A stretch of DNA of 64,000 nt. It comes from Adineta vaga (lineage: Eukaryota > Animalia > Rotifera). Positions 4,971 to 60,539 of the stretch are shown in pieces. The stretch spans positions 744,001 through 808,000 of the forward strand of contig CP075493.1 in NCBI GenBank assembly GCA_021613535.1, read 5' to 3'. The notes under the pieces are model-generated. The model ran no database searches. It saw only the letters and a program-made list of their open reading frames with translations, and was not told the DNA's origin. Position numbers and translations under genes: made by a program. Numbering within the stretch: the stretch's first letter is position 1; every line of letters starts with the position of its first letter.

Positions 4971-5482
4971 TCTCAAGAAGCCGATATTCGTCACATTTAT
5001 CCCTAGCTACATTTTCATCCTCATTCATCTGCACCTACATCCTCGCTGTCACTCACATCATTCTTTTCTTTCTCCTATGTTTTCTCTCACTTTCAGGGAT
5101 AAATTCCTAGCAATTATCTTGCACGATTGCTTCTCTTCTTATTTTTTCCACGGCCTTTAGTAGATATAAAACAAGTTACCGCTTTCTATTTTGACAGATA
5201 AATTCATTTATTTAGATAGTTGTCCTCTACAATGAATTCATGACAGAATGAACTGACACGAAAATAATTTATAATAAGTGCAAAAAAAAGAGAAACTTCT
5301 AAAGAGCATGTGAAAGAATTTGCTGATCAATGCACAGTTAGTTTGCTAGTTTAATTAATATGTCGACTTCTTCTATTTTATGAGTATTTTCGTTAACGTA
5401 AAGTGTTTGTTTTATCATATTGAAATTTTTGTCTAGTATTGTATAGATCGATTCATTATTATTTTAAGTGAAAACAATTAGC

Positions 5483-10157: not shown

Positions 10158-10349
10158 TTCCAACTCAATAATGTCACCTTTTGTTTTTTTTGTAGTAAAT
10201 AAATGTAACCTTGGCTTTTGAATAATATTGTGATTCAAAGAAGAAGAGAGAAGAATTTTTCTTTTACATAACTATTATTTGAATCGTATAAAAGCAACAG
10301 TTACATAAATCTTTTTTTTCTTTTCTTCGAAACATTTTCTTCAACAAAA

Positions 10350-11533: not shown

Positions 11534-11534
11534 T

Positions 11535-27582: not shown

Positions 27583-28129
27583 TTTAATAGAAAATAATGA
27601 CTCACTTTTGATGACGATAGACGATGTTTTTGTCTTATGGCGACACAACGAAACGAGAAGAGAATGTTAAGATATTTATTCATTAATACAACTGGGAATT
27701 TTCCCAGTTGAATGATTGTCAAATAGAATAAACTATTTTTTTTTATTGAATTATCTTATATTATCATTAGATTATATCTAAATGAATATTCTTATATAAG
27801 ATTATTTAACATGATTCTTAATTCGAAAAAAATGATTTAACTAATTGACCTTTTGTCTACACTTTTATATTAAATATATTATATAAAACATCATATTCAT
27901 ATTATTTTGAAAAATGTTCATTTCCTTTAATAATTAGAATCACAAAAGTCTTTCCTTTGAAAAAGAAAATATATAAATATATTTCACACTCTCACAATTT
28001 GTTTTTTCTAAAATCAAACAATTCATTACCGTTGTCAAATGATTTTTTAGATACTTCAGAAGAAAAAACAAAAATAATGTTTTTTTTTTGTTTTTATTAA
28101 AATTATTCAAACAGATGTTTATCAATCTG

Positions 28130-32937: not shown

Positions 32938-35900
32938 TTAACAGTTTCCATTTAATACAGCAGATCCATTAGAGCAACCAGCACATACGTAATATGGATA
33001 TCCATTACCAAGTGGTAAACACACTCCACCGCGACCTGCTGAGTTACAGTTAATCGACGGTGTACAAGGATTACCTATCAAAGAACACAAAATGAATCAT
33101 GCTATGTGAAAAATAGAAAAAGCTACCTAGACATGGATTATTCAGGCCATTTACACCGTATATACAGCCAGTACATTGATAGCTGCTGGTTCCATTAGCA
33201 ATTGCCGTACAATTACCACCACCACCAAGTTGTGCGCAGTTAGCACCCGTGAGACAAGGATTCCCTGTTAATGAGAGAGAGAATATAAGTCACTTTGTTC
33301 GATAAATGGTTTACTACTAATTACCTGGACATGCAGTGTTGTTTGTAGCAGGACCATAAGTACATCCAGTGCATTGATAATTTCCAGTTCCATCACCAAA
33401 TGCAACGCAACTACCCCCACCACTATTAGATGTGCAAGGAGTCGCCGACAAACAAGGATTCGCTAGGAATGATATAAAAATGAATCATATCATCTTTTAA
33501 GTGATTTACAATCCACTTACCTGGACATGGATTATTATAGGTATTTGAACCATATTTACAAGCAACACAGTGATAGTTTGTAGTTCCATTACCAATCGCC
33601 GCACAAATACCGCCACCACCAAGTTGTGTACAATTAACCGTCGTCGAACATGGACTCGCTGATATTTACAAAGGGACAAATCATATTATATGATAAATGT
33701 GTACAGCTAGTTACCTGGACATGCAGTGTTGTTCGTATTGGAACCATAACTGCATTCGGTACATTGGTAGTTGCCACTTCCGTCAAACGTAGGCAAGCAA
33801 TTACCGCCACCACCAAGGCTAGTACAGACACCTCCCATAAAACATGAATCCGCTAGAAATGAGAAATTCAAGTGCCTTCTAGGTAACCATATTGAGGGTG
33901 TGAATGTAAGTATCTATTGTTCAACTAAACACTCAACTCAGAGATTAATAAAATCGAAACTATTTTCTACAAGTGTGATCACGAAACATTCATTTAACTA
34001 TAGAACCACACATCTCAATACAAAACTAATCTGAGAAAATAATGGTCAATATCTTCTTATATGTAACAACCTAATTTTCTACTATGACATACAACATCAT
34101 ATGTATTTTCCTAAAACCTTATCCACACTCCTTCTAACTATAGCTAGGAAGAAACTAAATAACAATCTTGGGAGATTAACTTCACTTACTAGTAGTAGTT
34201 GCACTAGTGGTAGTAGTTGAGGTGGAACTAGTACTGGATGTAGAACTGGTACTTGAAGTCGAACTAGTGCTCGATGTGGAGCTAGTTGATGTAGTGCTGG
34301 TGCTTGAAGTCGAGCTAGTACTCGATGTGGAACTAGTTGATGTGGTGCTGGTGGTTGATGTAGAGCTCGTACTTGAAGTTGAACTAGTGCTGGATGTGGA
34401 ACTGGTGCTCGATGTAGAACTAGTTGATGTAGTGCTGGTGCTTGATGTGGAGCTCGTACTTGAAGTGGAACTGGTTGACGTAGAGCTTGTACTTGAAGTC
34501 GAGCTGGTACTTGATGTAGAACTAGTGGATGTTGTGCTGGTGCTGGATGTGGAGCTGGTACTTGAAGTAGAACTGGTTGACGTAGAGCTGGTACTTGATG
34601 TAGAACTAGTTGATGTTGTGCTGGTGCTGGATGTGGAGCTGGTACTTGAAGTCGTACTGGTACTTGATGTAGAACTGGTTGACGTAGAGCTGGTACTTGA
34701 TGTAGAACTGGTTGACGTAGAGCTAGTACTCGATGTTGAACTGGTGCTCGATGTGGAACTAGTTGATGTGGTGCTAGTGCTTGATGTAGAGCTCGTACTT
34801 GAAGTTGAACTGGTGCTGGATGTAGAACTGGTGCTCGATGTAGAACTAGTGGATGTAGTGCTGGTGCTTGATGTGGAGCTGGTACTTGAAGTAGAACTGG
34901 TTGACGTAGAGCTGGTACTTGATGTAGAACTAGTTGATGTTGTGCTGGTGCTGGATGTGGAGCTGGTACTTGAAGTCGTACTGGTACTTGATGTAGAACT
35001 GGTTGACGTAGAGCTAGTACTCGATGTAGAACTAGTGCTGGATGTGGAACTAGTTGATGTAGTACTGGTGCTCGATGTGGAACTTGTTGATGTGGTGCTA
35101 GTGCTTGATGTAGAGCTTGTACTTGAAGTGGAACTCGTGCTGGATGTGGAGCTGGTACTTGAAGTAGAACTGGTTGACGTAGAGCTAGTACTCGATGTAG
35201 AACTAGTGCTGGATGTGGAACTAGTTGATGTAGTACTGGTGCTAGATGTGGAACTTGTTGATGTGGTGCTAGTGCTTGATGTAGAGCTTGTACTTGAAGT
35301 GGAACTCGTGCTGGATGTGGAGCTGGTACTTGATGTAGAACTGGTTGACGTAGAGCTAGTACTCGATGTAGAACTAGTGCTGGATGTGGAACTTGTACTT
35401 GAAGTCGAACTGGTACTTGATGTAGAACTGGTAATTGAGGTAGAACTGGTACTGGATGTAGAACTACTTGATGTGCTGGAGGTTGATGTAGTTGACGTTG
35501 AGCTGGTGCTTGTGGTGATTTCGACTGAGGTTGAGGTTGTGTAGGTGGTTGTTGTGCTAACAGTTGATGTTGTGGTTATCGTGTTTTGTGTTGTTGAATG
35601 GTTAAGTGATGAATTGGATGATGCAGTGATTGTTGATGTCATAGTTAGATTGGTGTCTACTGGTGTACTATCGGTTGATATATTTGTTCGAAAAGTTGTC
35701 ACTGTTGCTGTTGAAGTTGTTTCTGCTGGGTTTATTAAAAGAAGTAATAATGGGTATTGTTTATATAATGGCAAGGATATTTTCCTACTTGTAGTTGCTG
35801 AATACTTGCTGGTCGTGACAACTATGGGCACAAGAAGTGTTACGGTGAATACAACCACACCGACCGCCGCAGCAACACCAGTCAAAAGTTTGAATCGCCG

Positions 35901-36038
35901 AGTCCTTTTTGTTAGAAACAAGGATACAAGGCATCAATGATAAAATTACGATGCTTACCATCCAATGTGCTGCACTGAAACTAGATGGTTTTCAATTGGA
36001 TTTATAGGTGACATGTTAATTTCTTCTTGAAAAGCCAT
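32938..36038 (-). CDS. Type II membrane mucin-like protein: TM anchor, ~450-aa Ser/Thr stalk, five exon-encoded EGF-like Cys repeats
   Basis: ATG at 36038, TM exon ~35905-35790, (TSS)n exon to ~34190, then five similar exons (e.g. DSCFMGGVCTSLGGGGNCLPTFDGSGNYQCTECSYGSNTNNTACP) ending at TAA 32938. Confidence 0.75.
34190..35520. repeat. Coding 9-bp-period tandem repeat (Thr-Ser-Ser)
   Basis: ACN-TCN-AGY units with variable third positions and longer duplicated blocks. Confidence 0.9.
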
Positions 36039-37835: not shown

Positions 37836-39134
37836 ATGGCTTGTAAACAATTCTATTTAATTTGTTTGATCATTTTTCATGTTTATTTATTCTCAAATGT
37901 TCAATCAGCAGCATCAAATTCGTTATCCGATTGTCAAAATGCAGTATCATCATTTCGTACAACAATAAATTATACTGCAACAAATATTACTGGAACAACA
38001 GGAATCAATGTAACATGTTCAGCATCTGGTGTTGTTTGTCCTGGTACAACTATCAATGGTGTTTGTGTTTGGCAACGAAAATTAAGTGTTGTTTGCCGAA
38101 ATGCAAGTGGTACAATTAAAATTCGTATTCAAACAAATGGTTTACCACCACGTTGTGCAAGTGTTCCAATGGGAAGTTTTCTTGAATTAAATGTTGATTT
38201 TGAAGTTAATTATAATCCTTCTGTTAGTATTAATTCATTAAATCAAAATTTTTCAAGTATTTCAACACTTTCACAAACAATTTGTACATTAACAAGTATA
38301 TCAACAGTTCCAACAGCTTCTGGTTTTGTTAATTACGGTTCAACATCTTTGAATACAGCAACAGGTGTTTCAGTTGATGGTGTGATGATTTTTAGTCCAG
38401 ATTCAGCAGATAATATTGATCCATTTTATCCACCAACAGGTGGAACTGCTGAATCAGTTGATAGTTGTCTTGCTCATTGTCAAGCAACTGGTATTTATCA
38501 TTATCATGTTGCAACAGGTTGTCAAGTTAATCCACCAACTGGAAATATAACATCATGTGCTGCAAATAGTGCTTGTAGTGCAAGTGTTGCGAATTATCTT
38601 GTTTCGTCATTTTCATCTTATCAAACACAAACTATTATTGGAATTGCAAAAGATGGACATTTAATTTATGGACCTTATTTATCTTCAGGTACACGTGTTA
38701 CATCAGGTTTTGATGCGTGTAATGGAATGTTTTATGATTCAAATGGAAATTATGCGTATTTTGCAACATCAACATATCCATATCTTGTAGGGTGTTTTGG
38801 TCCTGCTAATTATCCATCATTTGGTCCAAATTGTACAACAAATGGTCCAACCAATTATACAATGTCATCATATGCGATTGCATTAACTAATAGTTCAACT
38901 AATTCGACAACTACTTCGACTACTACTTCGACTACTACTTCGACTACTACTTCCACAACTACCTCGACAACCACTTCCACCACTACTTCAAAAACAACTA
39001 CAACAACAACGTCGGCATCAGCATCAGCAACAAGTTCAACCGCGAATAATATGCGTTCAATGAGTGTTCAATTACATATCAATTTTGGTTTTCTTCTTCT
39101 TCTTCTTTTATTTATTATCGTTGCAATGATTTGA
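37836..39134 (+). CDS. Secreted/GPI-type YHYH-domain protein, intronless
   Basis: Signal peptide, GVSVDGVMIF, DSCLAH, GIYHYH, IGIAKDGHLIYGP, DACNG and YPYLVGCF motifs, then a Thr-rich stalk and hydrophobic C-terminus. Confidence 0.85.
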   Translation: MACKQFYLICLIIFHVYLFSNVQSAASNSLSDCQNAVSSFRTTINYTATNITGTTGINVTCSASGVVCPGTTINGVCVWQRKLSVVCRNASGTIKIRIQTNGLPPRCASVPMGSFLELNVDFEVNYNPSVSINSLNQNFSSISTLSQTICTLTSISTVPTASGFVNYGSTSLNTATGVSVDGVMIFSPDSADNIDPFYPPTGGTAESVDSCLAHCQATGIYHYHVATGCQVNPPTGNITSCAANSACSASVANYLVSSFSSYQTQTIIGIAKDGHLIYGPYLSSGTRVTSGFDACNGMFYDSNGNYAYFATSTYPYLVGCFGPANYPSFGPNCTTNGPTNYTMSSYAIALTNSSTNSTTTSTTTSTTTSTTTSTTTSTTTSTTTSKTTTTTTSASASATSSTANNMRSMSVQLHINFGFLLLLLLFIIVAMI

Positions 39135-42396: not shown

Positions 42397-45300
42397 ATGG
42401 AACAACATGTTCAATCAAATGAATTTTTCGATATTAAACAACAAATTCCTCAAATAGAAACTATAGAAAATAATCAAAATAATTTGACTGAAATATCAAC
42501 ATTACCATCGGATTTGTATGTTTTGTTTGTTGTTGTTTACAAATTTTAAAAATGATTTTATTTTACTTTTAGAAAATGTTTTACTTTTTTAATATCAAGT
42601 TCAATCATTCATATTTTAACATTTTCATTTTTATTATGTATTATGATGATCAGTGGAATTATTATTGTTTATTTCAATGTTCCAAAACCAAAAGGTTTGT
42701 TTGTTTTGTTTTGTTTTTTATTATAGAAAATGTTTATATTAAACTAATAAAATACTTTTAATTTATTTTAGAATTGACATGTCAAATAAATTTTATAAAA
42801 ATCCCTAAAAATCCAATTGAATATGAATATGGTCCACGATCTATTGCTGTTGGTGATTTTAATGTTGATAGTTGGATTGATATGGTTGTTTGTAATTCAA
42901 TTATTAATAATATCGCGATTTATTTTGGATCAATCGATGGTATTTTTACTAAAGAATATCAATATTCAACAGGAATTAATTCAAAACCAATTATGGTTGC
43001 TGTAAATCATCTAAATAATGATTCTTATTTGGATATTGTAGTAGCAAATTATGGAACACATTCAATTGGAATATTTTATGGATTTGGTAATGGATCTTTT
43101 AAAGATCAAATTAAAATTTCAACAGGAATATCTCATCCATTAACAATTAATTTAATTGATTTAAATAATGATACATTCATTGATATTATTATTATTAATT
43201 ATGGTACAAATAGTTTTACGATTTATTATGGAAGTGAAAATGAATTTTATTCAAAATCGATGACTTATTCAACTGGTTATGATTCTTATCCATATTCATT
43301 AACAATTGCTGATTTAAATAATGATTATCAATTAGATATTATTATTGCAAATTATGGAACAAATAATATTGGAATTTTCTTTGCTAATCAAAAAAATAAT
43401 TCATTTGAAAATCAAATACTTATTTCAACTGGAATTAATTCTCATCCAACTTCTGTTGCTATTGGAGATTTAAATTCTGATCAATTTATTGATATTGTTG
43501 TTACAAATTATGGTACAAATATGATTTGTATAATGTTAAATGATGGAAATGGAATATTTTCAAAACAAACATTCTTTTCAATTGATTCAGCTTCACCATA
43601 TTCAATTGGTATTAATGATTTTAATGGAGATAATCGATTAGATTTATTTATTATTAATATTGGAAAGAATAATATTGGTTTATTTCTTGGTTATGGTAAT
43701 GGAAGTTTTCAAGAAGGAAGAATGAATTCAACGGGATCTTATTCAACAATTTCATTTGCTTTATATGATATTAATAAAGATAAAAGATTAGATACAATTA
43801 TTGTTAATAATGATACTGAAAGTATTCATATTCTTAAAGGTTATTTTGAAGGTTTTCCATATCGTACAACATATAATGTTCAATATCCAACAATCTTTAT
43901 AATTATTAATGATTTTAATAATGATACGATATTAGATATGATACTTATTAGTGAGATAAATGATACAATGATAATTTGTCTTGGAAATGGTGATGGATCA
44001 TTTGGAAGTCAAATAATATATTCAACTGGCTCTAATCCAACATCTACAGCTATTGGTGATTTTAATAATGACATGAAAATGGATGTCGTTATTACTAATA
44101 TGAATAGTGATAATATTTATGTATTTCATGGAAATGGTAATGGTTCATTTATATCTCAAAATACATATTCAACTGGTTCTAGTCCAATTTCTGTAGTTGT
44201 TGCTGATTTGAACAATGACAAACGATTAGATATCGTTGTTGCTAATTATGATCACAATACTGTGAGCATTTTTTTAGGATATGAAAATGGATCCTTTAGA
44301 AATCAAATGACATATTCAACGGGTGCTAATCCACGATCTGTTGCTATTGCTGATTTTAACGATGATCAATATCTTGATCTAGTTGTTACCAATTATAATA
44401 ATAGAACTATAAGTATTCTTCTTGGATTTGGTAATGGAAGTTTTGCAAATCATTTCACCTATCCAACTGGTTACCATCCGTACTTTGTAGTAGTTGATGA
44501 TTTTAATAATGATAATAAAATAGATATTGCTATTGCCAATTATGGTAGTAATACTGCAAGTGTTATGTTAGGATATGGTAATGGAAGTTTTTCAGAACAA
44601 ATTACACATGCAACGGGTGTTGCACCATCATCTATTAGTATTGCTGACATGAATAATGATACGCAATTAGATCTTGTTGTCGCTTGTGCTGGTTCGGTCA
44701 ATATATATATTTTATTTGGATATGGAAATGGTTCTTTTACTAATGCAATGTCATACTACATAAATATGAGGTCACATTCTCTTGCCATTGGTGATCTAAA
44801 TAATGATTCACGATTGGATATCATTGTAATACAAAATAGTAATATTCATGTAGGTATATTACTTCAATATAATAGAGGTGCTCTTATAAATGAATTGACT
44901 TATGCAGCTGGTGGAGGTTCTAAACTACGATCGATAATTGTCCATGATATAAATAATGATACTCACTTAGATGTAATTGTGGCGAATTATGGTACTGATG
45001 ATGTTGGCATTCTTTTAGGTTATGATAATGTTAATTTTATTGATCAAGTAATGATTAATATGGGTTCTGATTCTCAACCATCATCAATTACAGCTGGTCA
45101 TTTTAATGATGATATCTACTTGGATATTGCTGTAGCTCTTTCTGGCTCTAATCAAATTGGATTATTACTTGGAAATGGCCATGGATCATTTACTCGTCAA
45201 GCTACTTATCAAATTCCTTCCATATTTCCTCCTGTCATTGTCTCTGCTGGTAATTTTAATAATGATGAACAATCAGAAATTATCGTTGGATATGATGATA

Positions 45301-46973
45301 GTGATACTATTGATATCTATGTTATCTATAACACTGGATCTTTTACACTTCATGAAACATATTCAGTTGGTTTACATCCAAGATATTTATGCTTAGATTA
45401 TATTAATAACGATACTTACATTGATATTGTTGTTGTCAATATTGATTCCGATGATATAAATATTCTTCTTGGATATGGTAATGGTAGTTTTGCACAACCA
45501 ATGACTTATGCAACTAGTGCTCGGCCAAATTCTGTTGCTACCAGTGATTTTAATAATGACAATCGAATTGATCTAGTTGTGACTAGTTCTGTTAATCATT
45601 ATGTAAATATATTTTTAGGATATGGAAATGGTAGTTTTGCGAATCCTATAACATATTCGATTGGTTCTGGCTCACGACACTTAGCTGTGGGTGATTTCAA
45701 CAATGATAGACGACTAGATCTAGTTATTATCACTGCGAAATATGATATCATTCTATGTCAAGGTATTAATAATGGTTCTTTTTCAAATGGAATTACAATT
45801 GCAACTACCGACGACCCACGATACGTGATTGCAGCTGATTTTAATAATGATAATCGATTAGATCTTGCTGTTGTTAATTATGGTCTTGATAATGTAGGCA
45901 TTTTTATTGGTTATGCTAATGGTTCTTTTGAAAAACAAGTCAAATATTTAGTTGACGTCAATCCATTTGCATTAGCAGTTGGAGATCTAAATCTTGATAA
46001 TCAGTTAGATATTGTTGTAACTTCAATAGGTTATAATAAAATAAATATTCTCCTTGGTTATGGTAATGGATCTTTTACAAGTAAAATACTATTTTCAGTT
46101 AGTATTCTTCCAGAATCTGTAACTATTGGTGATTTGAATAATGATGGTTATCCAGATATAATTGTTACCAATTTTGGTAGTAATTCTATTAGTGTTCTAT
46201 TAGGATATGGTAATGGATTATTTACAAATCAAATTATATATACAGTTGGTTCTGGTCCACAATTTGTCGTTACTATTGATTTGAATAATGATACTTATCT
46301 CGATATTATTATTGCGAATGGAGGTGATTGTACTTTAGTTGTTATGTTTGGTTGTTCAAATTTAATCTTTCGAAATCAAAATACACTTTCAACTGGTAAA
46401 AATTCACGATCACGATCATTTGTTATTAATGATTTCAATAATGATAATTATACAGATATTATCGTAGCTAATTCAGGTACTGATAACATTGGTATTTTTC
46501 TTGGATATGGAAATTTCTCTTTCACAAATCAAACAACATATTCAACTGGTAATAATTCTTCTCCATATTCTATTACAACTGGTGATTTAAATAATGATAA
46601 ACAATTAGATATTGTTACTGCAAATTCAAATTCAGATAACATTGGTATTTTTCTTGGTTATGGAAATGGTTCATTTACGAATCAAATAACATATTTCACG
46701 GGTTCATCTTCATATCCTTATTCTGTAGCTATTGGTCATTTTAATAATGATACAATACTTGATATCATTGTTGTTAATTATAATAATAATAAATTTGGAG
46801 TTCTTCTTGGATATGATGATGGAACATTTAATAATATAATTTTCTTTTCAATGCCATATGGATCGAATCCATTCTCTCTAATCCTTGCTGATTTTAGTAT
46901 GGATGGAAAAATGGATTTTGCAGTTGTAAATAATGGTACAGACAATTTAAATATTTACTTACGTACTTGTTAA
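42397..46973 (+). CDS. Type II membrane protein with a long FG-GAP/VCBS repeat array
   Basis: Two short 5' exons (42397-~42516; ~42573-42693 with a TM helix) and one 4.2-kb exon with >20 repeats of GDFNND..LDIVVANY...I.LGYGNGSF. Confidence 0.88.
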
Positions 46974-52931: not shown

Positions 52932-54881
52932 CTAATCATCAATTGGAGTCGAAATATCGGATTGAATTGAAGGAATATTTGGGATACGTTTTGAAAATTT
53001 TTTAAATGTAATATACCATATTTGAATCAAATGACATGACATACATAGAATTAATATCAAAACAATGATCCACGCCTATAATAAAATAGATATAGAAAAT
53101 AAATATATAAAAAACAAACCAAACTTACTCTCCATGATTGAGGTACATCTATTGTTAAATTAACAAGTCCATATTGAATACAAGTGATTACTCCTGCTGA
53201 TGTCCACATAATACCAGTTAATCTACCAATGTATTCAGATGGAAAACTAAAATAAATATTACAATACAATTCTTATTGTAAATAAAATCTTTTTTTTCAT
53301 ATTGTAAAATTACAAAGTCGAAATGACTGCTTGTGAACCAGCTACAATCACTGAACGACCAATATAATTAAAAATTAATGCAGGAATAATAACAGAAGAT
53401 TTAACAAACATACAAATGATGCATATTATTATATTTAATATCCATGCTAATGTTTGAATAATTGCAGCATTTAATAGTTTTTGTTTTTGATCTAAATAGA
53501 ATTTGATTGGAACATTTTATTTTGTAAATTTGAGTAATAAATTACTTTGTTCTGATCGAAATGCAAGAAGAAAACCAACAATTGGACATAGAATAATTTG
53601 AGATAATGATGCCATATTAAATGCAAAAGTATATTTATCACCTACAATGAATTTATTTCATATTATATTCAAAGATTTCAATAGAAATCTTTACTTATTA
53701 TTTTATCATTATGATTTATATAATAAATCCATGGATACCAAGTCACCGATAGAAGAATATTTGGCATTAATAAAATACTTAAATAAAGAACAACCAAAAT
53801 ATATAATGGATTAGTTATATATTTCCAAAATCCAACACGTTGATAGATATTTGTATACCATTTCCTTTTATTATTTATCTCTAAAATATGAAAATGATAA
53901 GTACAGATAAACAAACAAACAAACAAGATTCTTGTCTTTACGTACCATTTGTTGATATTGTTTCCATTCGTTCTAATTTTGTATCAAGTTTATATTCAAG
54001 ATTCAATATCGGAAATTTCCAATCAAGAAATAAAAATGATGATAAAAACATTAATATTCCAAAAGACATCCAAATATAAGATAATTGAGATAATGTTAAT
54101 TTATTATTATCAATTAAGACCTAAATAATTTTTATATTTCATATAAAACTATTCTAATAGATAGAAAGAAAGAAAATTAAAAGTTTTACTTGAAATACAG
54201 AATACCAGATTGATGCAGATAAACTTGAACCGACAAGTAATGTTAATAAAAATGCTCGTCCTTGAGAAAAATAATTACATGTTGCATAACTGGTTATTTG
54301 TACAGTGATACCCGATAATGCTGTGAAGAGTGTATGAACAAATAACAAAGAATCTCGATGTAAAATAAAAGAAAAAAAATTAAAATTACAAAAAAAAATA
54401 TTCGTATTTTTTTAAAGAAACTTATCAGATTTAACCAAAGCTAAAGCTAACCATCCTATAATATGAAATATTCTAAATAAAATATGAAATAAATCAATGA
54501 AAATATGATCAATAAGAAGGATTACATTGCGATTAATTTAACAAAACGACCACCAAACATATCAATTAATATCCCAACAAACATAGATGGTAAATTAAAA
54601 AAAATTATACCTAAAGTCAATGCATTCTAAAACAGAAAACTATATTCAAATAAACAAAAGAATTTGTTCGATATTTTTACTTGATATTGTTGTGCTTGAC
54701 CAGTACAATCTTGTTCGGTTGAATTAATTCCATTTAATGAATGACAATATTTACTATAGATACCATATTTTGGTAATATTTTGAAAAGTGCTGCAAAACC
54801 AAAAATATTTGCACTTATAAGATTTACTTCAATTAAAAGCCAAATAATACCAATCCATTTTCGATATACATTTGAATTCAT
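52932..54881 (-). CDS. SLC43-family (LAT3/LAT4/ENBT1-like) MFS transporter, about ten exons
   Basis: LLIEVNLISANIFGFAAL..IL...GIYSKYC (SLC43 TM1 pattern), LIDMFGGRFV, LLVGSSLSAS and FPSEYIGRLTG. Many short GT-AG introns; stop at 52932. Confidence 0.75.
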
Positions 54882-55257
54882 CTAGTATAAGTTTTATTTA
54901 ATAGAATTTATTGAAAATAATCTCATATATTATATTATAGTTCGTTATTATTCTCAATAGAAATAAAGAAAATAAAAATGAATATTTAAGACTTATGATG
55001 CAGTTGATCGTACTTTTCAATGAATACCTGGAGAAATTTTTATAATAGAAATATTCTAAAGAAAATAAACGGGGTGATTCGATAAAAACTCATCAGGAGA
55101 TCTTTAATAGAGAATCAATCAGAATATAATAAAAAATAAGAATATTTTGTTTTTCGTATTTTTCCCAATAATACGAATACAAAAAGAAAAAGAGGGACAA
55201 ATTATACAGTTAAAAGTAGAACGAAATTGTAATTATGAAATTGATTTTCTTTTTATT

Positions 55258-56214
55258 TTATAATAATTTTAATATTTGTTCACAATTCAAAAAACAAACG
55301 TTAGGCATTTTTTTAATCGTTTGAAGAGCTTTTTTCAAATGAAAAGCTTTTGCTGGTGTACCAATAATAAATGTATGCAATCCTAAACATATAATTTTAG
55401 CTTTTTTTGTCTTTTCTGTAACTAATTGTTCAATATAATCTATTATTGTTTGTGCATATTGTTCACCCGTATAACCTTGACACATACATAATGATATATC
55501 ATTTGTTTCCATTGAATAAGGTAGAACTATTAATTCTTTTTCTTTTTCATTCGATGATTTTAATTTATATAAAACATCATCATTTGTCGCATCTAATGAT
55601 AAACGTATACCATTATCAACTAAAAATGGAATATATTGATTAGAATCGTTTCAATTCATTTTTTAGAAAATTAAATGGTTTCAGAATACATGGAATAATA
55701 CTATAAATTGATCTTTACCTAAGATTTTTGTTGAATTATCTGGTGCAGAAAATCCTGGAGTTAACCATGCTTTTGGTCTTTGTTGATGTCCTAATGCTTG
55801 TTCAATTTGATCTAAAGATTGTTTAACTTGTTCTTCAAAAGATATATGTTTTACAGCAGATAGAGAATTTGTAAGACCATGACCTATAATATCAATATTT
55901 TGGTTTTCTTTTGAATATATTTTTATTTCTTGAAATAGATCTGTTTCTTTATCAATTAAATATGAATTCATTGCAATACTAACTGGTATTTGTAAATCAG
56001 AAAATATCGTAAGAAGACGATTTGTTCCTTGTCTATTACCATAATCACGCCAACCACTATTTGCAATATCTGGTATAAGATTACTTAAATGTGGTTGAAT
56101 ACAAGGACCTCCATGACCATTTATAAATACTTCAGAATTTATTATTGGAACAACAGCTACTTTACAATCATTTAACCAATGAGTTAAAGAAATCTCTTCT
56201 CGTATATCGAACAT
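55258..56214 (-). CDS. PuuE-like carbohydrate-esterase-4 (polysaccharide deacetylase fold) amidohydrolase, bacterial type, 2 exons
   Basis: INSE, NSGWRDYGNRQG, IGHG, PKAWLTPG, NDD, PYSMETND and LGLHTFIIG motifs. Intron 55718-55620 restores a 285-aa frame. Confidence 0.85.
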
Positions 56215-56400
56215 ATCATAAAACTAAAAATATAGAATAATATCTACAATTAATGTAAAGTACAAATTAGCAAATATGAAATTGATAATACATCTGAATT
56301 TACTTTGAAATTCTTTTTATTTTATCTAGTTGGTTTACTTCTACAGTTACATAGATAAATACACGAACTTTTCATTTACTTTTTGTTGATAAATATCAAT

Positions 56401-56560
56401 GAATATAAGGAAGAAGGTTTCACTGTCTATCTACTATGCATTCGATCCTTGTAATAGCTACGATAACCAAACTTTTCACGGTACTTGCCTAGATTCCACG
56501 GAAGACAGAGAGAGAGAGAGAGGGAGAGAAAGTGTTGAGTGAAATGTCAATCTCACCCTC
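56401..56560 (+). mobile_element. Degenerate 5' fragment of the Helitron-like family
   Basis: ATAAGGAAGAAGGTTT...CTATGCATTC...GTAATAGCTACGATAACCAAACTTT resembles the other copies; it ends in a (GA)n tract. Confidence 0.55.
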
Positions 56561-57425
56561 ATGAATTCTCTATTAAATGTTCGCATATCAGTAGTCTTTT
56601 AGGTGATACAGAATGTATATTTACTTTGATAAAGCTTTTTTAAAAAAGAATCATGCAAGGTCGTTATATAGGTATGATAATAATTTCATTCACACAATAA
56701 ACGAATTCTTGTGTTATCGGCATCAAACAACATATGTGTATGTTATTTATTACTTGTTAATATCCTGCAAAGAGTAATTACCAACAGTAAATTACTAAAT
56801 AATTGAGATTTCATTAAGATTTACTAAAATTTCAAGAAGACATGCCTCGAATCTGGACGTTCGAGTTCGTTGAATTTGAGTATTGACCTTGAGTTGAGAC
56901 TTTGACATTAATAAAAAAAAAAGTACTAGAAGTTAGGCAAATGCAGTAATTTTAGAATTTACTACTATAATAAATTTGAATACAATAAGATGAATGACCC
57001 GCAATCTGAAGATCAGGAACTATCAAAAAATAAACTAATGGTGTCTAAAAAATCTTCAATCGAATCTGATCGAATTTCAAGTTATTTTTCCAAAGTGATT
57101 ATACATTAATAGTTGCAACTCTTATTAAATTTTGAAAGGCTATCAAAGATTTTTTTAATTAAATTCTGCGTAGATTGCATATAGTTTATATGCATACAAT
57201 GCACAATAAAGAGGGAAAGCGTGGGCACCTGATTCGCACTTTCGTCCTTGGGCGCGATCATTATTGTTCAATTTGTCACGAAATATGTATTGATTCTAGG
57301 TTATTTAGATATCTATGAAGTTTATACGCGTATTATATATTTACCTATTCATTCTCAGAAATTATCCAATTTTTTTTAAATAGTTTTCATTCCACTACTT
57401 TTCATCAATAATTATTTCTTTTCAG

Positions 57426-58299
57426 GTTCTAATTCAACATTTGCGGTTCCTACGTGCTCATATGAGGAACTTGAAGATGGGTATGGAACCATTATTGGAC
57501 CTATGTCGGCTAAAAAACGTGAAGGTCTAACAATTCCATTTTATAAAAATATTGTTGAAGGAAAAAATTTTGATTTTGAATGTCGTCCTCCAGTAACATG
57601 TCGTGCGGCAGAAATTCATTTTAAATCAAATAAAGAAACACTTTGGTTAGAACGACATATGCATTTAACTCAATTATTTATTGGTCTGGGCGGAAAAGAT
57701 CCATTTATGATGGTTTTAGGTAAACCAACACATAATCGAACGGATTTAAATGAAGAACAAAGAGCTCTACCTGATTTAAATAATGTTAAAGCTTTTATTG
57801 TACCAGCAGGTAAGATGTTATAAATTTTACTTGTATAATCATTATCTTAAAGATTAGAGATTTCTATCTAGCTTTGAATAATCTCCAAAAGATATGTCTA
57901 CCTTAATCTAACAATCTGAATCCGTGTTCTAATGTAACAAAAAATGCGCGGGGATAAAATATTTTTTTTGCTTTGATGTCTATCCTCATCACTATTATGA
58001 TCGAGCCTTTAACTTTAATGAATCTTTATTATTTTGTATTTTTTTTTGTGTGTGTAGGTTGTGGTTTAATTCTTCATAAAGGTACCTGGCATGATTTTCC
58101 AGTCAGTATTGGGAATTCTATAACTGTTTTAACGTTTAATAGTGCAGAGGTAGTTGAAGCTCTCGCTGCTATGCCTGCACCAGGTGAAATGCTTGGACAA
58201 GGTGATGTTTACAAAATTAACCTTCCGCAACGTCTTGGCCTAACAGTTACGTATAATTTTGAAATAACAACAACAACAAATAACGAAAAAGAAACATAA
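57426..58299 (+). CDS. Ureidoglycolate lyase/hydrolase-like cupin protein (AllA-like), spliced; first exon not located
   Basis: WLERHMHLTQLF, VKAFIVPAG|CGLILHKGTWHDFP. Exons 57426-57809 and 58058-58299 join in frame. An acceptor AG at 57424-57425 implies an upstream exon, or the start is ATG 57503. Confidence 0.78.
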
Positions 58300-58807
58300 T
58301 AATTGATGAAAATAATACAAATCAAATCAAATCAACTATTTATACTTATTTTACCCTGAATTTCTAGATTTCTATATCTGTAATAGCATAAACTTGTTAT
58401 TCAATAGATTTACGCAATCATAAAACATTTTCTTCATACTTTGTACATGTGAATAAACCACTATGTTTGTCATACATTGTCAATAGAGATACACGAATTC
58501 CAATTAACAGGATATCAGCCCTGACTGAAACTGGACGTATTTCTAATCGTCATATTGTCCTTGTGGTAACCATATTTTATGTCCAATGGGCATTATTGAA
58601 GAATATAGACTAGTTAACATCATACACACTTAAGCTCACGATTACAATACTTTATAGTTCTACACACATTGCAATCGCATACAAAGAAAACTTCTATAAT
58701 AGTAATTAGGATACTTCTATTGGTCTTTATGATAGATCAATAAATAGTTATAATAAAACAAGATTATGCTTCTTTTTTTATAGTTCCAAGTAGAAGATTT
58801 TAAGACA

Positions 58808-59485
58808 TTATTTCAAGACGTTGAGCACTTTATCTGATTGTGATACCCAACCAAATATACCTCCTTGAGCCTTGATCATATCGAGAGCTGCTACTTGAAA
58901 CTTAGGAAAGTATGATCCAACACAATCTTCAAGAACAAGACATTCATAGCCTCGATCATTAGCTTCACGTACAGTAGTATTAACACAGACTTCAGTGGTG
59001 ACTCCGGTGACGATCAGTTGCTTAATATTGTAATTGTTAAGAATCGTATTGAGATCTGTCGCATAGAATGCACCTTTTCCACATTTATCAATAATTGGTT
59101 CGTCAGGTAATGGATAAAGTTCTGGAATAATATCATGTCCAGGTTCACCTCGCACCAAAATGCGACCCATTGGACCAGCATCACCAATGCACATAGTACT
59201 TCGACCGCGAATCTTCTTACTTAATGGAAGATCAGATAAATCTGGCCGATGACCTTCTCGAGTATGTACGATTTTTAAGCCAGCAGCACGCCATGCTGCC
59301 AGTAGTTTCTGGTTTGGACTAATTGTTCGACGAAGTTGTTCCACATCATTACCCAACATTGCACCAAAACCACCGGGTTCTAAAAAATCGCGTTGCATGT
59401 CGATAATCAATAATGCGCATTGACTTGGTATAAACTCGAATGCATATGGCTCAGCTGTAACGGTTAAAGTTTTATTAATATCCAT
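58808..59485 (-). CDS. trtA: Isochorismatase-family cysteine hydrolase, triuret hydrolase (TrtA)-like, intronless
   Basis: D-K-C triad motifs (IDMQRDF, IDKCGKGAF, TTEVCV), HTREGHRPDLSD and REANDRGYECL. Specificity positions read GGF/LGND/TTE/SYFP/QGGI (TrtA type), not GGY/MGYD/TTD/ATD/QGGV (BiuH type); compared from memory of those sequences. Confidence 0.82.
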   Translation of the reverse strand: MDINKTLTVTAEPYAFEFIPSQCALLIIDMQRDFLEPGGFGAMLGNDVEQLRRTISPNQKLLAAWRAAGLKIVHTREGHRPDLSDLPLSKKIRGRSTMCIGDAGPMGRILVRGEPGHDIIPELYPLPDEPIIDKCGKGAFYATDLNTILNNYNIKQLIVTGVTTEVCVNTTVREANDRGYECLVLEDCVGSYFPKFQVAALDMIKAQGGIFGWVSQSDKVLNVLK

Positions 59486-59642
59486 TTTAACGTTATGTTT
59501 TTGCTATATCAAATCCAATTTAGAAGATTATTCTAAAAAAGCAAAATCTGAAATAATTTAATAGAGAACACTTCATATAAAGTTTTAATCTTCAAAATAC
59601 TCAACAAAAAACAGTGTGGTTGTGAATATATACTACTACGTT

Positions 59643-60062
59643 CTAGCTTTTAATGAAATCAGTATGCACACTGACATGAGCAGCAACAATTTTCCAGCCA
59701 TTACCAACATCTAAATCCGATCCTAATCTAGCCCAGGTTTGCATTTGTCGGCCACATACTGGTTTTTCGACACCATTGCTAAACTCCGTACTGACTGTTG
59801 CGAAGTCATTACCAAACGTCGTAATTATTGTACGATGAAGTTGTCTTTCAGCTGGTACTGGCTGTGCAGTAGTGCGCCACTGATAAATTGCCTCTACGCC
59901 ATGTTGAATATCGGCAATACCATAACGAACCGTTTCAGGCGCATTCCAAAACATTAGATTCATTGTATTTACATCATTATCTATCAGAGCTTGTTCATAC
60001 CTGGTAAATGCTGCCTTTACTTGCGCAACCACTTCATGTTTGTTAATTTCAAACGTCATCAA
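59643..60062 (-). CDS. AtzH/HpxZ-like (DUF3225, SnoaL/NTF2 fold) protein, intronless
   Basis: V.AAF.RYEQAL..NDV, FW....TVRYG, ITTFG.DFA....EF, GRQMQTW and WKIVAAHVS motifs. Confidence 0.88.
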   Translation of the reverse strand: MMTFEINKHEVVAQVKAAFTRYEQALIDNDVNTMNLMFWNAPETVRYGIADIQHGVEAIYQWRTTAQPVPAERQLHRTIITTFGNDFATVSTEFSNGVEKPVCGRQMQTWARLGSDLDVGNGWKIVAAHVSVHTDFIKS

Positions 60063-60539
60063 TTATTATAGAGCTGGTTAAGTATTGAATTTTTTTCCTG
60101 ATTTCAACAATTCTAAATAGATTACCATACGCAAATGTTAACGTTGATTGTGAATCAAATTTTTATGTCACAATGTTGGACGAAACTCGAATCTAAACTA
60201 ACCTTGATTTTATTCGTCCACGTTGATAAACAATGTGACTCGTTTGCTTTACGAAAGAATATGAAAAATTTGTCTTAATAAGTGTATATATAAGAACATT
60301 TTTTTTTAAACTTTTTATTGTTCTTTTATCTTAAAATTATTTTATTTATTACTTGAAAAACGTTTAAGATATAAAACTAAGAGTATCAATGAGAATAAAA
60401 GATGCAGGTGTGGAAAAGTTTCATAACCTAAAATAATATTATAAAAATCTAGTAATGCATTCTTTAACACGATCATTTAAAAACTAAGCAATTAAATTTT
60501 TCAATTTTGTTTTAATTCATCTAGGTTTTCTACCTCTTA

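What the first reader, a model, noticed from the sequence alone, without database searches (positions are those of the whole stretch)
52932..60062. Candidate horizontally assembled ureide/triuret (oxidised-purine) catabolic gene cluster in an animal genome
Seen: five consecutive genes within ~7 kb encode an SLC43-like transporter, a PuuE-like CE4 hydrolase, a ureidoglycolate-lyase-like cupin, a TrtA-like cysteine hydrolase and an AtzH/HpxZ protein. Two of the four bacterial-type genes carry spliceosomal introns and the flanks are animal genes and transposons, which argues against contamination. Established: PuuE is an allantoinase; ureidoglycolate lyase acts in allantoin breakdown; TrtA hydrolyses triuret, an oxidation product of urate; AtzH and HpxZ occur in s-triazine and purine catabolic operons; mammalian SLC43A3 transports purine nucleobases. 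Inference: these unrelated folds converge on one chemistry, suggesting an operon-like metabolic cluster that recovers nitrogen from, or detoxifies, oxidatively damaged urate/ureides. That would suit a desiccation-tolerant animal under oxidative stress. I am not aware of such a cluster being described in a metazoan.
Basis: partly seen in the sequence, partly recalled or inferred. Interest (0 to 1): 0.93.

Follow-up and report, generated by a model that had tools for sequence, protein, structure and literature searches.

The report
Rotifer cluster of foreign ureide-breakdown genes
The rotifer Adineta vaga keeps a membrane transporter next to four transcribed enzymes of non-animal origin; elsewhere these enzyme families share bacterial operons or are fused into one protein, which suggests a borrowed pathway for degrading nitrogen-rich urea-like compounds such as triuret.

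Summary
Window 52933-60059 (Adineta vaga chromosome 1) carries five adjacent genes: a multi-exon membrane transporter, a CE4 hydrolase, an AllA-fold cupin, a TrtA-type cysteine hydrolase and an AtzH-family protein.

RNA-like contigs show all four enzyme genes are transcribed. The CE4 has one GT..AG intron and the cupin has two.

- **Right:** the genes look functionally linked. The cluster recurs in A. ricciae and in an unnamed metagenomic rotifer-like organism with a different gene order and flanks. Rotaria keeps it as two pairs.
- **Right:** bacterial homologues of the cupin sit immediately next to either a CE4 or cyanuric acid hydrolase AtzD. Protist transcripts fuse cupin-CE4, and one contig fuses cupin-CE4-TrtA.
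- **Right:** the hydrolase carries every TrtA-versus-BiuH signature residue. The AtzH-like pocket matches homologues linked to BiuH and TrtA, i.e. the TrtB type.
- **Right:** at least two donors are involved.
- **Wrong or untested:** the CE4 and cupin are not the allantoinase or ureidoglycolate lyase. A. vaga has canonical copies of both elsewhere.
- **Wrong or untested:** no BiuH or AtzE was found, so the pathway is incomplete.
- **Wrong or untested:** SLC43 affinity, transposon flanks and the oxidative-stress link were not tested.

This scan's other notes on this place are on the same window, not on other DNA.

The parts
52933..54881 (-). Multi-exon membrane transporter gene. ATG at 54881, stop at 52935-52933, about nine coding blocks. 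MFS-like; SLC43 affinity not verified.
   Evidence: Coding blocks are collinear and 57-79% identical in A. ricciae L084 and Rotaria L090/L092 and in the metagenomic rotifer-like L129-L132. An MFS motif-A-like stretch lies in exon 2. No Pfam hit per exon. The Atlas gave weak leads to families I take to be of the MFS clan. Exon borders were not checked with RNA.
55243..56245 (-). CE4 hydrolase gene, a distant PuuE relative. CDS exon 1 is 56214-55719, the intron is 55718-55620 (99 nt, GT..AG) and exon 2 is 55619-55258. The product is 285 aa.
   Evidence: A spliced RNA-like contig covers 55243-55619 joined to 55719-56245. The frame and length were checked locally. TIGR03212 scores only 56-68 bits against a cut-off of 424.6. 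The orthologue's model best matches PuuE-type structures. GC3 is 0.077.
56704..58425 (+). AllA-fold cupin gene (P0137, 209 aa). Exon 1 runs to 56737 with the ATG at 56734. Intron 1 is 56738-57425, exon 2 is 57426-57809, intron 2 is 57810-58057 and exon 3 is 58058-58299. The 3' UTR reaches about 58425.
   Evidence: An RNA-like contig joins 56704-56737, 57426-57811 and 58062-58425. The second joint was shifted by 2 nt so that it reads GT..AG and reproduces the 209 aa of P0137. PF04115 scores 41.7 bits. The fold matches AllA.
58808..59485 (-). TrtA-type isochorismatase-like cysteine hydrolase, intronless, 225 aa (P0001).
   Evidence: PF00857 scores 153 bits. The BiuH model scores 280 bits, below its cut-off of 370. 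The best solved relative is TrtA. All catalytic residues and all six TrtA-versus-BiuH residues are of TrtA type. RNA-like contigs cover 58702-59466. It is single-copy in the genome.
59547..60059 (-). AtzH/HpxZ-family NTF2-like protein of TrtB type, intronless. CDS 60059-59643, 138 aa. The transcript ends with a poly(A) tail near 59547.
   Evidence: PF11533 scores 147 bits and NF033625 scores 139 bits against 135. The closest solved structures are 2owp and AtzH. Pocket residues match the BiuH/TrtA-linked type. A poly-T loose end lies at 59547. It is single-copy in the genome.
56246..56703 (.). Divergent intergenic region between the CE4 and the cupin. It contains a (GA)n run at about 56496-56536 and is a possible shared promoter region.
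   Evidence: The sequence is shown. RNA-like contigs stop at 56245 and start at 56704. The same divergent CE4/cupin arrangement occurs in A. ricciae, Rotaria and L129. Promoter function is inferred only.

Best explanation
This is a real, transcribed five-gene catabolic cluster of Adineta vaga. It was assembled in the bdelloid lineage from at least two foreign sources plus a transporter.

**Shown**
- The five genes, their introns and their transcripts.
- Conservation as a unit across rotifers.
- The full TrtA signature in the hydrolase.
- A TrtB-like pocket in the AtzH-family protein.
- The CE4 and cupin are a co-inherited pair. Their bacterial homologues are immediate neighbours, and their protist homologues are fused, once together with a TrtA-type domain.

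**Inferred mechanism**
1. The transporter moves a nitrogen-rich ureide across a membrane.
2. The CE4 opens or deacylates a cyclic ureide or triazine-like compound. In bacteria it occupies the position next to the cupin that cyanuric acid hydrolase AtzD otherwise holds.
3. The cupin acts just before or after that step, as a C-N lyase or decarboxylase.
4. The TrtA-type enzyme deamidates triuret to carboxybiuret.
5. The TrtB-type protein decarboxylates carboxybiuret.
6. Nitrogen is released as ammonia. Later steps may use the allophanate hydrolase encoded on chromosome 6.

The true substrates are unknown. An origin from oxidised purines is plausible but untested.
For: **Gene identities:**

**Transcription and splicing:**

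**Synteny in rotifers**
- A. ricciae L084 has all five genes collinear, plus a tandem duplicate of cupin, TrtA and AtzH-like.
- The metagenomic rotifer-like contigs L129 and L218 hold all five genes within 5.5 kb. The order differs and so do the flanks, which are RdRP and Laminin_G_3.
- Rotaria has a transporter-TrtA pair and a CE4-cupin pair.
- A. steineri has the AtzH-TrtA pair.

**Bacterial context**
- 76 of the 80 loci with cupin homologues are non-rotifer. The gene immediately next to the cupin is AtzD in 43 of them and a CE4 in 18, never both.
- Xanthine-dehydrogenase-like subunits lie nearby in about 17.
- The AtzD neighbours pass the NCBIfam cyanuric acid amidohydrolase cut-off, at 384 and 400 bits against 360.
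- Operon L162 holds a permease, guanine and adenosine deaminases, XDH, the cupin, AtzD, AtzE, an HpxZ-like gene and GGT.

**Fusions**
- L205 encodes one 810-aa ORF with cupin, CE4 and Iso domains. The Iso domain carries the TrtA signature.
- Seven contigs encode a cupin-CE4 ORF of about 500 aa. One starts with the last 12 nt of the dinoflagellate spliced leader.

**TrtA signature:** D, F, F, N, K, K, A, V-T, E, C, Y, Q, I. BiuH has Y, Y, S, D, T, V at the discriminating sites.

**Single acquisition of the TrtA-like gene:** the rotifer clade has SH-aLRT 99.

**AtzH pocket:** all rotifers have Ala/Asn where AtzH has R66/R96, like the BiuH-linked bacterial homologues, which have Ala/Ala. Six of eight AtzE-linked homologues keep Arg/Arg.

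**Allophanate hydrolase** is present elsewhere in the genome.
Against: - No BiuH paralogue was found, and no AtzE-family gene above its cut-off, so a triuret pathway would stop at biuret or carboxybiuret.
- None of the 80 bacterial loci with the closest TrtA homologues has this cupin or CE4 within 10 kb. The two modules are joined only in eukaryotes and in L087, whose Iso is not of TrtA type.
- The cluster is split in Rotaria and reduced to a pair in the A. steineri locus.
- The AtzH-like transcript ends before the TrtA gene, so the genes are separate mRNAs and co-regulation is unproven.
- No biochemical function is known for this cupin or CE4 subfamily.
- The surrounding window is rich in other foreign-looking genes, so some adjacency of foreign genes is expected by chance.
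- The TrtB-type argument rests on only two bacterial loci.
Confidence: 0.6

Rival explanations
1. Chance neighbourhood. The genes are unrelated foreign genes that landed in a foreign-gene-rich, near-terminal part of chromosome 1 and do not share a pathway.
For: - The window lies 0.74-0.81 Mb from the chromosome end.
- It holds other non-animal-type intronless ORFs: an FG-GAP protein of 1399 aa, a YHYH protein, a radical SAM protein and a HIT plus His_Phos protein.
- The cluster is split in Rotaria and partial in A. steineri.
Against: - The same families are fused into single proteins.
- They are immediate neighbours in dozens of bacterial loci.
- All five genes stay within 5.5-7 kb in lineages where both the internal order and the flanking genes differ.
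- Even in Rotaria the two fragments are pairs drawn from the same five genes.
Confidence: 0.1
2. Canonical allantoin pathway. The CE4 is a PuuE allantoinase and the cupin is ureidoglycolate lyase, as the family names suggest, so the cluster is simply the late purine-degradation pathway.
For: - Fold-level matches to PuuE and AllA.
- Bacterial homologues sit near xanthine dehydrogenase-like genes.
Against: - TIGR03212 scores 56-68 bits against a cut-off of 424.6.
- The CE4 orthologue is only 23% identical to A. vaga's own canonical PuuE genes on chromosome 4.
- A canonical AllA lies on chromosome 5 at 192 bits, against 41.7 bits for the cluster cupin.
- The cupin has no sequence relative in the PDB and is 16-19% identical to AllA structures.
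- In bacteria the CE4 position is interchangeable with AtzD, not with allantoinase.
Confidence: 0.07
3. Single-block transfer. The four enzyme genes came together from one donor operon and were not assembled in the rotifer.
For: - Bacterial operon L087 has Iso, an AllA-like cupin and a CE4 together.
- L064 and others have an AtzH-like gene directly upstream of the TrtA-type gene.
- The L205 fusion shows that one organism can carry three of the families in one gene.
Against: - Rotifer CE4 groups with the eukaryotic fusion CE4 domains, at SH-aLRT 97.
- The rotifer cupin shares a 6-7 residue insertion with the fusion cupins.
- Rotifer TrtA is 78-80% identical to bacterial TrtA-type proteins but only 52% identical to the fusion's TrtA domain.
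- GC3 differs strongly between the genes, from 0.08 to 0.30.
- The Iso of L087 lacks the TrtA signature.
Confidence: 0.12
4. Contamination or chimeric assembly.
For: - The TrtA-like protein is unusually similar to bacterial proteins, at 78-80%.
- Long-read contiguity was not checked here.
Against: - Spliceosomal introns are removed in RNA-like contigs.
- Host-like AT-rich codon usage.
- An 18-Mb contig with animal genes on both sides.
- A DNA run covers the whole stretch with overlapping contigs.
- The same linkage appears in independent assemblies of other species.
Confidence: 0.01

Closest known systems
Bacterial triuret/biuret pathway (trtA, trtB, biuH, atzF; Herbaspirillum sp. BH-1; PMC7948467, PMC12625717)
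   Same: - A TrtA-type hydrolase with the complete catalytic and discriminating residue set.
[quoted passage not shown]
- An allophanate hydrolase is present in the genome.
   Different: - No BiuH anywhere in the A. vaga assembly.
- The genes are separate eukaryotic mRNAs.
- The neighbours are a CE4, an AllA-fold cupin and a transporter, which the 80 closest bacterial trtA loci lack.
Cyanuric acid operon atzDGEHF of Pseudomonas sp. ADP (PMC6219798)
   Same: - An AtzH-family protein with the proposed catalytic Tyr and Arg conserved.
- Bacterial homologues of the cluster's cupin lie directly beside AtzD-type cyanuric acid hydrolases, some with AtzE and an AtzH/HpxZ-like gene in the same operon.
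   Different: - No AtzD, AtzE or AtzG was found in A. vaga.
- Two carboxylate-binding arginines of AtzH (R66, R96) are replaced.
- A CE4 stands where AtzD stands in bacteria.
Allantoin degradation enzymes PuuE (CE4 allantoinase) and AllA (ureidoglycolate lyase), and Klebsiella HpxZ
   Same: - Same folds. The PuuE-type CE4 matches at TM about 0.7 and the AllA cupin at TM about 0.75.
- The HpxZ model is passed marginally.
- Bacterial relatives have a purine-catabolic context.
   Different: - Sequence identity is only 16-23%.
- The curated PuuE cut-off is missed by a wide margin.
- A. vaga has separate canonical PuuE and AllA genes elsewhere.
- The HpxW/X/Y partners are not found.
Eukaryotic catabolic gene clusters and transferred operons (fungal clusters such as allantoin use, PMC4347624; bacterial siderophore operon in yeasts, bioRxiv 10.1101/399394)
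   Same: - Non-homologous genes of one presumed pathway, including a transporter, are kept adjacent in a eukaryote.
- The enzyme genes are of foreign origin.
   Different: - The host is an animal.
- The cluster was assembled from at least two donors rather than moved as one operon.
- The chemistry is only partly known.
[quoted passage not shown]
   Same: - Expressed foreign genes, some with acquired introns.
- Purine metabolism is the KEGG pathway with most foreign enzyme classes in A. ricciae.
   Different: Those studies list single genes. In the papers searched I found no description of this cluster, or of TrtA/TrtB-type genes in an animal.

Membership tests
TrtA (triuret hydrolase, isochorismatase-like hydrolase family) | Catalytic triad Asp-Lys-Cys, plus F29, K132, Q202 and the cis-peptide pair V157-T158 | tested here: met
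   Window residues D29, K134, C167, F34, K137, Q207 and V162-T163 align without gaps to TrtA 6xix. Residue roles are taken from PMC7948467.
TrtA (triuret hydrolase, isochorismatase-like hydrolase family) | The six positions that separate TrtA from BiuH: F35, N41, A134, E160, Y187, I205 | tested here: met
   The window protein has F40, N46, A139, E165, Y192 and I210. All 120 closest homologues agree, apart from one Asp at the E160 position. The Humisphaera BiuH neighbour has Y, Y, S, D, T, V.
TrtA (triuret hydrolase, isochorismatase-like hydrolase family) | Hydrolyses triuret and barely touches biuret | not testable with these tools
   Needs an enzyme assay.
BiuH (biuret amidohydrolase) | NCBIfam equivalog NF050097 cut-off (370 bits) and BiuH consensus residues | tested here: not met
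   The score is 280 bits. The signature residues are of TrtA type. A true BiuH (L001:8470-9171) scores 405 bits.
AtzH (1,3-dicarboxyurea amidohydrolase) | PF11533 fold with Tyr22 and Arg46 | tested here: met
   PF11533 scores 147 bits. Y21 and R45 align to AtzH Tyr22 and Arg46.
AtzH (1,3-dicarboxyurea amidohydrolase) | Arginine-rich pocket for two carboxylates (R63, R66, R73, R96) and partnership with AtzE/AtzG | tested here: not met
   R66 is Ala and R96 is Asn in all rotifer sequences. No AtzE-family gene above its cut-off was found in the genome.
HpxZ (oxalurate catabolism protein) | NCBIfam NF033625 cut-off of 135 bits | tested here: met
   The score is 139.2 bits, only just over the cut-off. 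Bacterial AtzE-linked members score 196-203 bits.
HpxZ (oxalurate catabolism protein) | Encoded with HpxW/X/Y-type partners (AtzE-like amidase, GGT-like amidohydrolase) | tested here: not met
   None lies in the cluster. No AtzE-family gene above its cut-off was found. GGT was not searched.
TrtB (carboxybiuret decarboxylase) | AtzH/HpxZ-family protein encoded beside trtA (PMC7948467; PMC12625717 Fig. S11) | tested here: met
   It is adjacent to the TrtA-type gene in A. vaga, A. steineri, A. ricciae and L129/L218. Its pocket pattern is shared with the BiuH-linked bacterial homologues L049 and L058.
TrtB (carboxybiuret decarboxylase) | Sequence kinship with the characterised TrtB, and decarboxylase activity | not testable with these tools
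   No reference TrtB sequence was at hand. The source paper PMC6952224 is not held.
PuuE allantoinase (CE4) | NCBIfam TIGR03212 cut-off of 424.6 bits | tested here: not met
   The best exon-level match is 56 bits. The full-length orthologue P0127 scores 68 bits. Canonical copies on chromosome 4 score 533 bits.
PuuE allantoinase (CE4) | PuuE-type CE4 fold | tested here: met
   The model of orthologue P0127 has pLDDT 78. Its top matches are 1z7a and 3cl6, with TM 0.69-0.73 and 18-20% identity.
Ureidoglycolate lyase AllA (PF04115) | Pfam gathering score and AllA cupin fold | tested here: met
   The score is 41.7 bits against 23, covering only profile positions 70-144. The top fold matches are 1xsq, 1xsr, 2bdr and 1yqc.
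Ureidoglycolate lyase AllA (PF04115) | Orthology with characterised AllA (NCBIfam equivalogs, sequence relatives in the PDB) | tested here: not met
   The cupin exons have no NCBIfam hit. P0137 has no PDB sequence match even at E = 1. The genome's canonical AllA on chromosome 5 scores 192 bits.
SLC43 transporters | Sequence kinship with SLC43A1-3 | tested here: inconclusive
   Searches exon by exon gave no Pfam or PDB hit. The Atlas gave only weak leads, to families I take to be of the MFS clan.
Eukaryotic metabolic gene cluster | Three or more non-homologous genes of one pathway kept adjacent | tested here: met
   Adjacency is conserved in several rotifers despite rearrangement. That the genes share one pathway is inferred from fusions and operons, not shown.
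Eukaryotic metabolic gene cluster | Co-regulation of the members | not tested
   Only contigs of RNA-like runs were available, and they cannot rank expression.

The most novel reading that the evidence does not exclude
The AllA-fold cupin, together with a ring-opening amidohydrolase (AtzD in some organisms, a PuuE-like CE4 in others), defines an uncharacterised and widespread enzymatic route. The route would lead from purines, via a xanthine-dehydrogenase-like enzyme, to triazine or linear ureide intermediates such as cyanuric acid, carboxybiuret and triuret. These compounds would then be true metabolites, not only chemical damage products. Bdelloid rotifers captured both this module and the bacterial TrtA/TrtB module and clustered them with a transporter. 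Dinoflagellate-like protists reached the same coupling by gene fusion.
Probability: 0.3. Interest if true: 0.85.

Novelty: new variant of a known kind. Interest (0 to 1): 0.75.

Why it matters
Catabolic gene clusters are familiar from bacteria, fungi and plants. To my knowledge they are very rare in animals.

- **A conserved animal cluster.** An animal holds four foreign enzymes from at least two donors next to a transporter. The set stays together through rearrangements over the divergence between Adineta and Rotaria. This gives a natural case for asking why selection clusters pathway genes in eukaryotes.
- **A new animal enzyme.** In the papers searched I found no TrtA/TrtB-type triuret enzymes described in any animal.
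- **Concrete enzymology.** The operon and fusion evidence gives testable candidate roles to two orphan enzyme subfamilies, the cupin and the CE4. It also links cyanuric-acid and triuret chemistry to purine catabolism, a link I did not find described in the papers searched.

Tried and rejected
- **Pfam, NCBIfam and PDB searches of the transporter exon by exon** found nothing. One call failed on a stop codon and was corrected.
- **Atlas search of transporter exon 1** gave only weak leads, to families I take to be of the MFS clan. Atlas search of the L205 fusion gave nothing.
- **The joined transporter, CE4 and cupin models were not sent to any search tool.** I used exon references and the database proteins P0137, P0127 and P0359 instead.
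- **Representative-library search with the AtzH-like protein** was uninformative. The window protein is itself the representative of its 50% cluster, so its closest relatives were hidden.
- **A sample of 401 genomes of one bacterial order** gave AtzH-like hits of at most 55% identity.
- **Context look-ups** for P0207 returned only 2-kb contigs, and P0209 was not on record.
- **My family accession for allantoicase was wrong.** PF04960 is glutaminase, so says nothing about allantoicase.
- **The AtzD search of the rotifer genome** found nothing, but its control did not ring, so absence is not shown.
- **The paper defining TrtB (PMC6952224)** is not held.
- **Rejected readings:** contamination, canonical allantoinase and ureidoglycolate lyase, and a single-operon transfer (see rivals).
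- **Not attempted:** Complex prediction, because I make no binding claim.

Full report
**Where this is.** The window is G000:C1:744001-808000 of a 100.8-Mb, six-contig assembly. The cupin's database twin P0137 is named 'hypothetical protein I4U23_000151 [Adineta vaga]' and sits on an 18.1-Mb contig. The organism is therefore the bdelloid rotifer Adineta vaga, and the locus lies about 0.8 Mb from one end of chromosome 1.

**The five genes.**
- *AtzH-like gene (59643-60059, minus strand).* An intronless ORF matching Pfam AtzH-like at 147 bits and NCBIfam HpxZ at 139 bits, against a cut-off of 135.
- *Isochorismatase-family gene (58808-59485, minus strand).* An intronless hydrolase matching PF00857 at 153 bits. 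The BiuH model scores 280 bits, below its 370 cut-off.
- *Cupin (plus strand).* It matches PF04115 at 41.7 bits as a whole protein.
- *CE4 (minus strand).* Its exons match Polysacc_deac_1 and PuuE only weakly.
- *Transporter (52933-54881, minus strand).* About nine coding blocks encode a polytopic membrane protein. Exon 2 carries an MFS motif-A-like stretch.

**Handling of spliced models.** Exons were searched by reference. The full-length proteins used were database entries: P0137, and the orthologues P0127 and P0359. Exons were joined only inside a local script, to check frame, length and GC3. For that reason the SLC43 claim could not be tested. Exon-wise Pfam and PDB searches were blank, and the Atlas search gave only weak leads (Nodulin-like, OATP and CLN3), families I take to be of the MFS clan.

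**Real, expressed animal genes.** I laid contigs of three RNA-like runs from two studies and one DNA-like run on 54900-60100.
- The RNA-like contigs cover only exons.
- One 914-nt contig joins 55243-55619 to 55719-56245. This removes a 99-nt GT..AG intron from the CE4.
- One 783-nt contig joins 56704-56737, 57426-57811 and 58062-58425 of the cupin.
- The ATG lies at 56734. After a 2-nt shift of the ambiguous second joint, the model gives exactly the 209 residues of P0137.
- The TrtA-like and AtzH-like genes are covered without gaps.
- A poly-T loose end at 59547 marks the poly(A) site of the AtzH-like mRNA, 62 nt before the TrtA-like start codon. The two are therefore separate transcripts.
- The DNA-like run covers introns and spacers.
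- GC3 is 0.077 for the CE4, about 0.23 for the cupin, 0.26 for the TrtA-like gene and 0.30 for the AtzH-like gene. The window's GC is 0.286.
- Downstream lie a rhodopsin-family GPCR and a B-box protein. Transposons were not verified.

**The hydrolase is TrtA-type.**
- The best solved relatives are Herbaspirillum TrtA (6xix, 268 bits), ahead of BiuH structures at 238-244 bits.
- The TrtA paper names the catalytic residues and the six positions that separate TrtA from BiuH.
- The rotifer protein has the TrtA residue at every one of them. So do all 120 closest homologues, apart from one Asp at the E160 position.
- The Humisphaera BiuH neighbour, which scores 405 bits on the BiuH model, has the BiuH residues.
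- The closest non-rotifer relatives are bacterial, from Tepidisphaeraceae, Verrucomicrobiota, Acidobacteriota and Limnocylindria, at 76-80% identity.
- In a quick maximum-likelihood tree all named rotifer sequences form one clade with SH-aLRT 99 inside the bacterial sequences. The clade includes A. vaga, A. steineri, A. ricciae, two from Rotaria sp. and R. magnacalcarata.
- This means one acquisition, before Adineta and Rotaria diverged.
- The gene is single-copy in A. vaga, and there is no BiuH paralogue.

**The AtzH-family protein is best read as TrtB-type.**
- The proposed catalytic Tyr22 and Arg46 of AtzH are conserved. So are R63, R73, F94, Q106 and Q108.
- R66 and R96, which in AtzH help bind a dicarboxylate, are Ala and Asn in all rotifer sequences.
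- Among bacterial homologues encoded near TrtA-type genes, six of eight AtzE-linked ones keep Arg/Arg. The two linked to BiuH have Ala/Ala.
- A. vaga has no AtzE-family gene above its cut-off.
- The sample is small, and no reference TrtB sequence was available.

**The CE4 and cupin are not the allantoin enzymes.**
- A. vaga has two canonical PuuE genes in tandem on chromosome 4, at 533 bits against a cut-off of 424.6.
- It has a canonical AllA on chromosome 5 at 192 bits, and a uricase on chromosome 1.
- The cluster's CE4 reaches 56-68 bits on the PuuE model. Its orthologue is 23% identical to the canonical copies.
- The cupin has no sequence relative in the PDB.
- Predicted structures confirm only the folds. 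The cupin model has pLDDT 87 and best matches AllA at TM 0.75-0.78 and 16-19% identity. The CE4 orthologue's model has pLDDT 78 and best matches 1z7a and PuuE 3cl6 at TM about 0.7.

**What the relatives' neighbourhoods say.** A metagenome scan with a cupin alignment returned 80 loci.
- Four are rotifer-like, with GC 0.29.
- Among the other 76, the gene immediately beside the cupin is an AtzD-family gene in 43 and a PuuE-like CE4 in 18, never both.
- Xanthine-dehydrogenase-like subunits lie nearby in about 17.
- The AtzD neighbours pass NCBIfam's cyanuric acid amidohydrolase cut-off, at 384 and 400 bits against 360.
- One full operon, L162, reads: permease, guanine deaminase-like, adenosine deaminase, XDH subunits, cupin, AtzD, XdhC, AtzE-family amidase, HpxZ-like, gamma-glutamyltransferase.
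- In the cupin tree, AtzD-partnered and CE4-partnered cupins form separate clades.
- The cupin therefore works with a ring-opening amidohydrolase in a purine-catabolic setting, and the CE4 takes AtzD's place. I found no description of this association in the papers searched.

**Natural fusions.**
- L205 carries one uninterrupted 810-residue ORF. It has a cupin domain (73-233), a CE4 domain (292-571) and an isochorismatase domain (588-810) bearing the full TrtA signature.
- Seven mRNA-like contigs of about 1.8 kb encode cupin-CE4 proteins of about 500 residues.
- One of them begins with the last 12 bases of the dinoflagellate spliced leader.
- These fusion cupins share with the rotifer cupins a 6-7 residue insertion that bacterial homologues lack.
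- The rotifer CE4 groups with the fusion CE4 domains at SH-aLRT 97, away from bacterial CE4s.
- The rotifer TrtA-like protein is 78-80% identical to bacterial proteins, yet only 52% identical to the fusion's TrtA domain.
- At least two sources therefore fed the cluster. None of the 80 closest bacterial TrtA loci has this cupin or CE4 within 10 kb. They carry BiuH (31 loci), a Cupin_7 protein (22), or AtzE plus HpxZ-like genes.

**Conservation in rotifers.**
- A. ricciae contig L084 has all five genes in the A. vaga order, followed by a tandem copy of cupin, TrtA-like and AtzH-like and the same GPCR.
- A second A. ricciae contig has only that trio.
- A. steineri has the AtzH-like/TrtA-like pair.
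- Rotaria sp. Silwood1 has the CE4 and cupin as a divergent pair on one contig. It has the transporter and TrtA-like gene as neighbours on another.
- An unnamed rotifer-like organism is common in metagenomes. Its CE4 protein is listed in 34 blocks of the collection.
- In that organism TrtA-like, AtzH-like, transporter, cupin and CE4 lie within 5.5 kb. The order differs, the CE4 is intronless, and the flanks are an RdRP gene and a Laminin_G_3 gene.
- What is conserved is the set of five genes, not the neighbourhood.

**Mechanism and gaps.**
- *Shown:* identities, signatures, transcription, linkage and fusions.
- *Inferred:* the transporter moves a ureide. The CE4 opens or deacylates a cyclic ureide or triazine-like ring. 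The cupin acts on its substrate or product. TrtA deamidates triuret to carboxybiuret, and the TrtB-type protein decarboxylates it. Allophanate hydrolase genes on chromosome 6 could finish the job.
- *Gaps:* there is no BiuH or AtzE, so as encoded the route ends at biuret or carboxybiuret, unless the CE4 or cupin covers that step.
The link to desiccation was not tested at all.

**Novelty.**
- Foreign genes in bdelloids are well known. Purine metabolism tops the list of pathways with foreign enzymes in A. ricciae.
- I found no paper that joins bdelloids with these enzyme families.
- I rate this a new variant of a known kind: a eukaryotic catabolic gene cluster, here in an animal, assembled from transferred genes.
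- It also brings a possibly new enzymatic module, the cupin with a CE4 or AtzD.

Noticed in passing
G000:C4:4701590-4702480 and 4705471-4706361 (L209, L210): Two tandem canonical PuuE-type allantoinase genes (TIGR03212 at 533 bits) sit in open frames of 474 and 484 aa. The frames are longer than the 297-position domain, so another domain may be fused to it.
   Followed up: partly
G000:C5:14384063-14384560 (L102); G000:C6:12176242-12177986 and C6:3937059-3938820 (L103-L105); G000:C1:8629818-8630697 (L212, L213): A canonical AllA-type ureidoglycolate lyase, two allophanate hydrolase loci over the TIGR02713 cut-off, and a uricase lie elsewhere in the genome, unlinked to the cluster.
   Followed up: partly
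window 42774-46973 (+), 37836-39134 (+), 26194-27648 (-), 21165-22418 (+): Long intronless ORFs of families that look non-animal to me are interspersed with rhodopsin-type GPCR genes at 5468-6337 and 15586-16569. They are an FG-GAP repeat protein of 1399 aa, a YHYH protein, a radical SAM protein and a HIT-like plus His_Phos_1 protein. The region looks rich in foreign genes.
   Followed up: partly
window 33000-36000: A GC-rich stretch (0.40-0.43 against 0.29 overall) has strong GC skew (up to +0.40). It carries overlapping ORFs of 579 and 445 aa on opposite strands, with no Pfam match.
   Followed up: no
L162:1536-16797 (metagenome contig Ga0172379_10000245): A bacterial operon joins purine deaminases and a xanthine-dehydrogenase-like enzyme to the AllA-fold cupin, cyanuric acid hydrolase AtzD, an AtzE-family amidase, an HpxZ-like protein and a gamma-glutamyltransferase. 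I found no description of this combination in the papers searched.
   Followed up: partly
L205:1740-4172:+ and L133, L139, L143, L146, L154, L159, L160: Natural fusion proteins occur: cupin-CE4-TrtA (810 aa) and cupin-CE4 (about 500 aa). L160 starts with the last 12 bases of the dinoflagellate spliced leader.
   Followed up: yes
L084:5479-7687 and 10001-12203 (Adineta ricciae): The trio of cupin, TrtA-like and AtzH-like genes is tandemly duplicated in A. ricciae.
   Followed up: partly
window 55620-55718 versus L218:10001-10930: The CE4 intron of A. vaga is 99 nt, a multiple of three. The orthologue in the metagenomic rotifer-like contig is an uninterrupted 309-aa ORF, against 285 aa in A. vaga. 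The intron may have arisen from former coding sequence.
   Followed up: no
window 56496-56536: A (GA)n microsatellite lies in the divergent spacer between the CE4 and the cupin. The read tool skipped it as a repeat.
   Followed up: no
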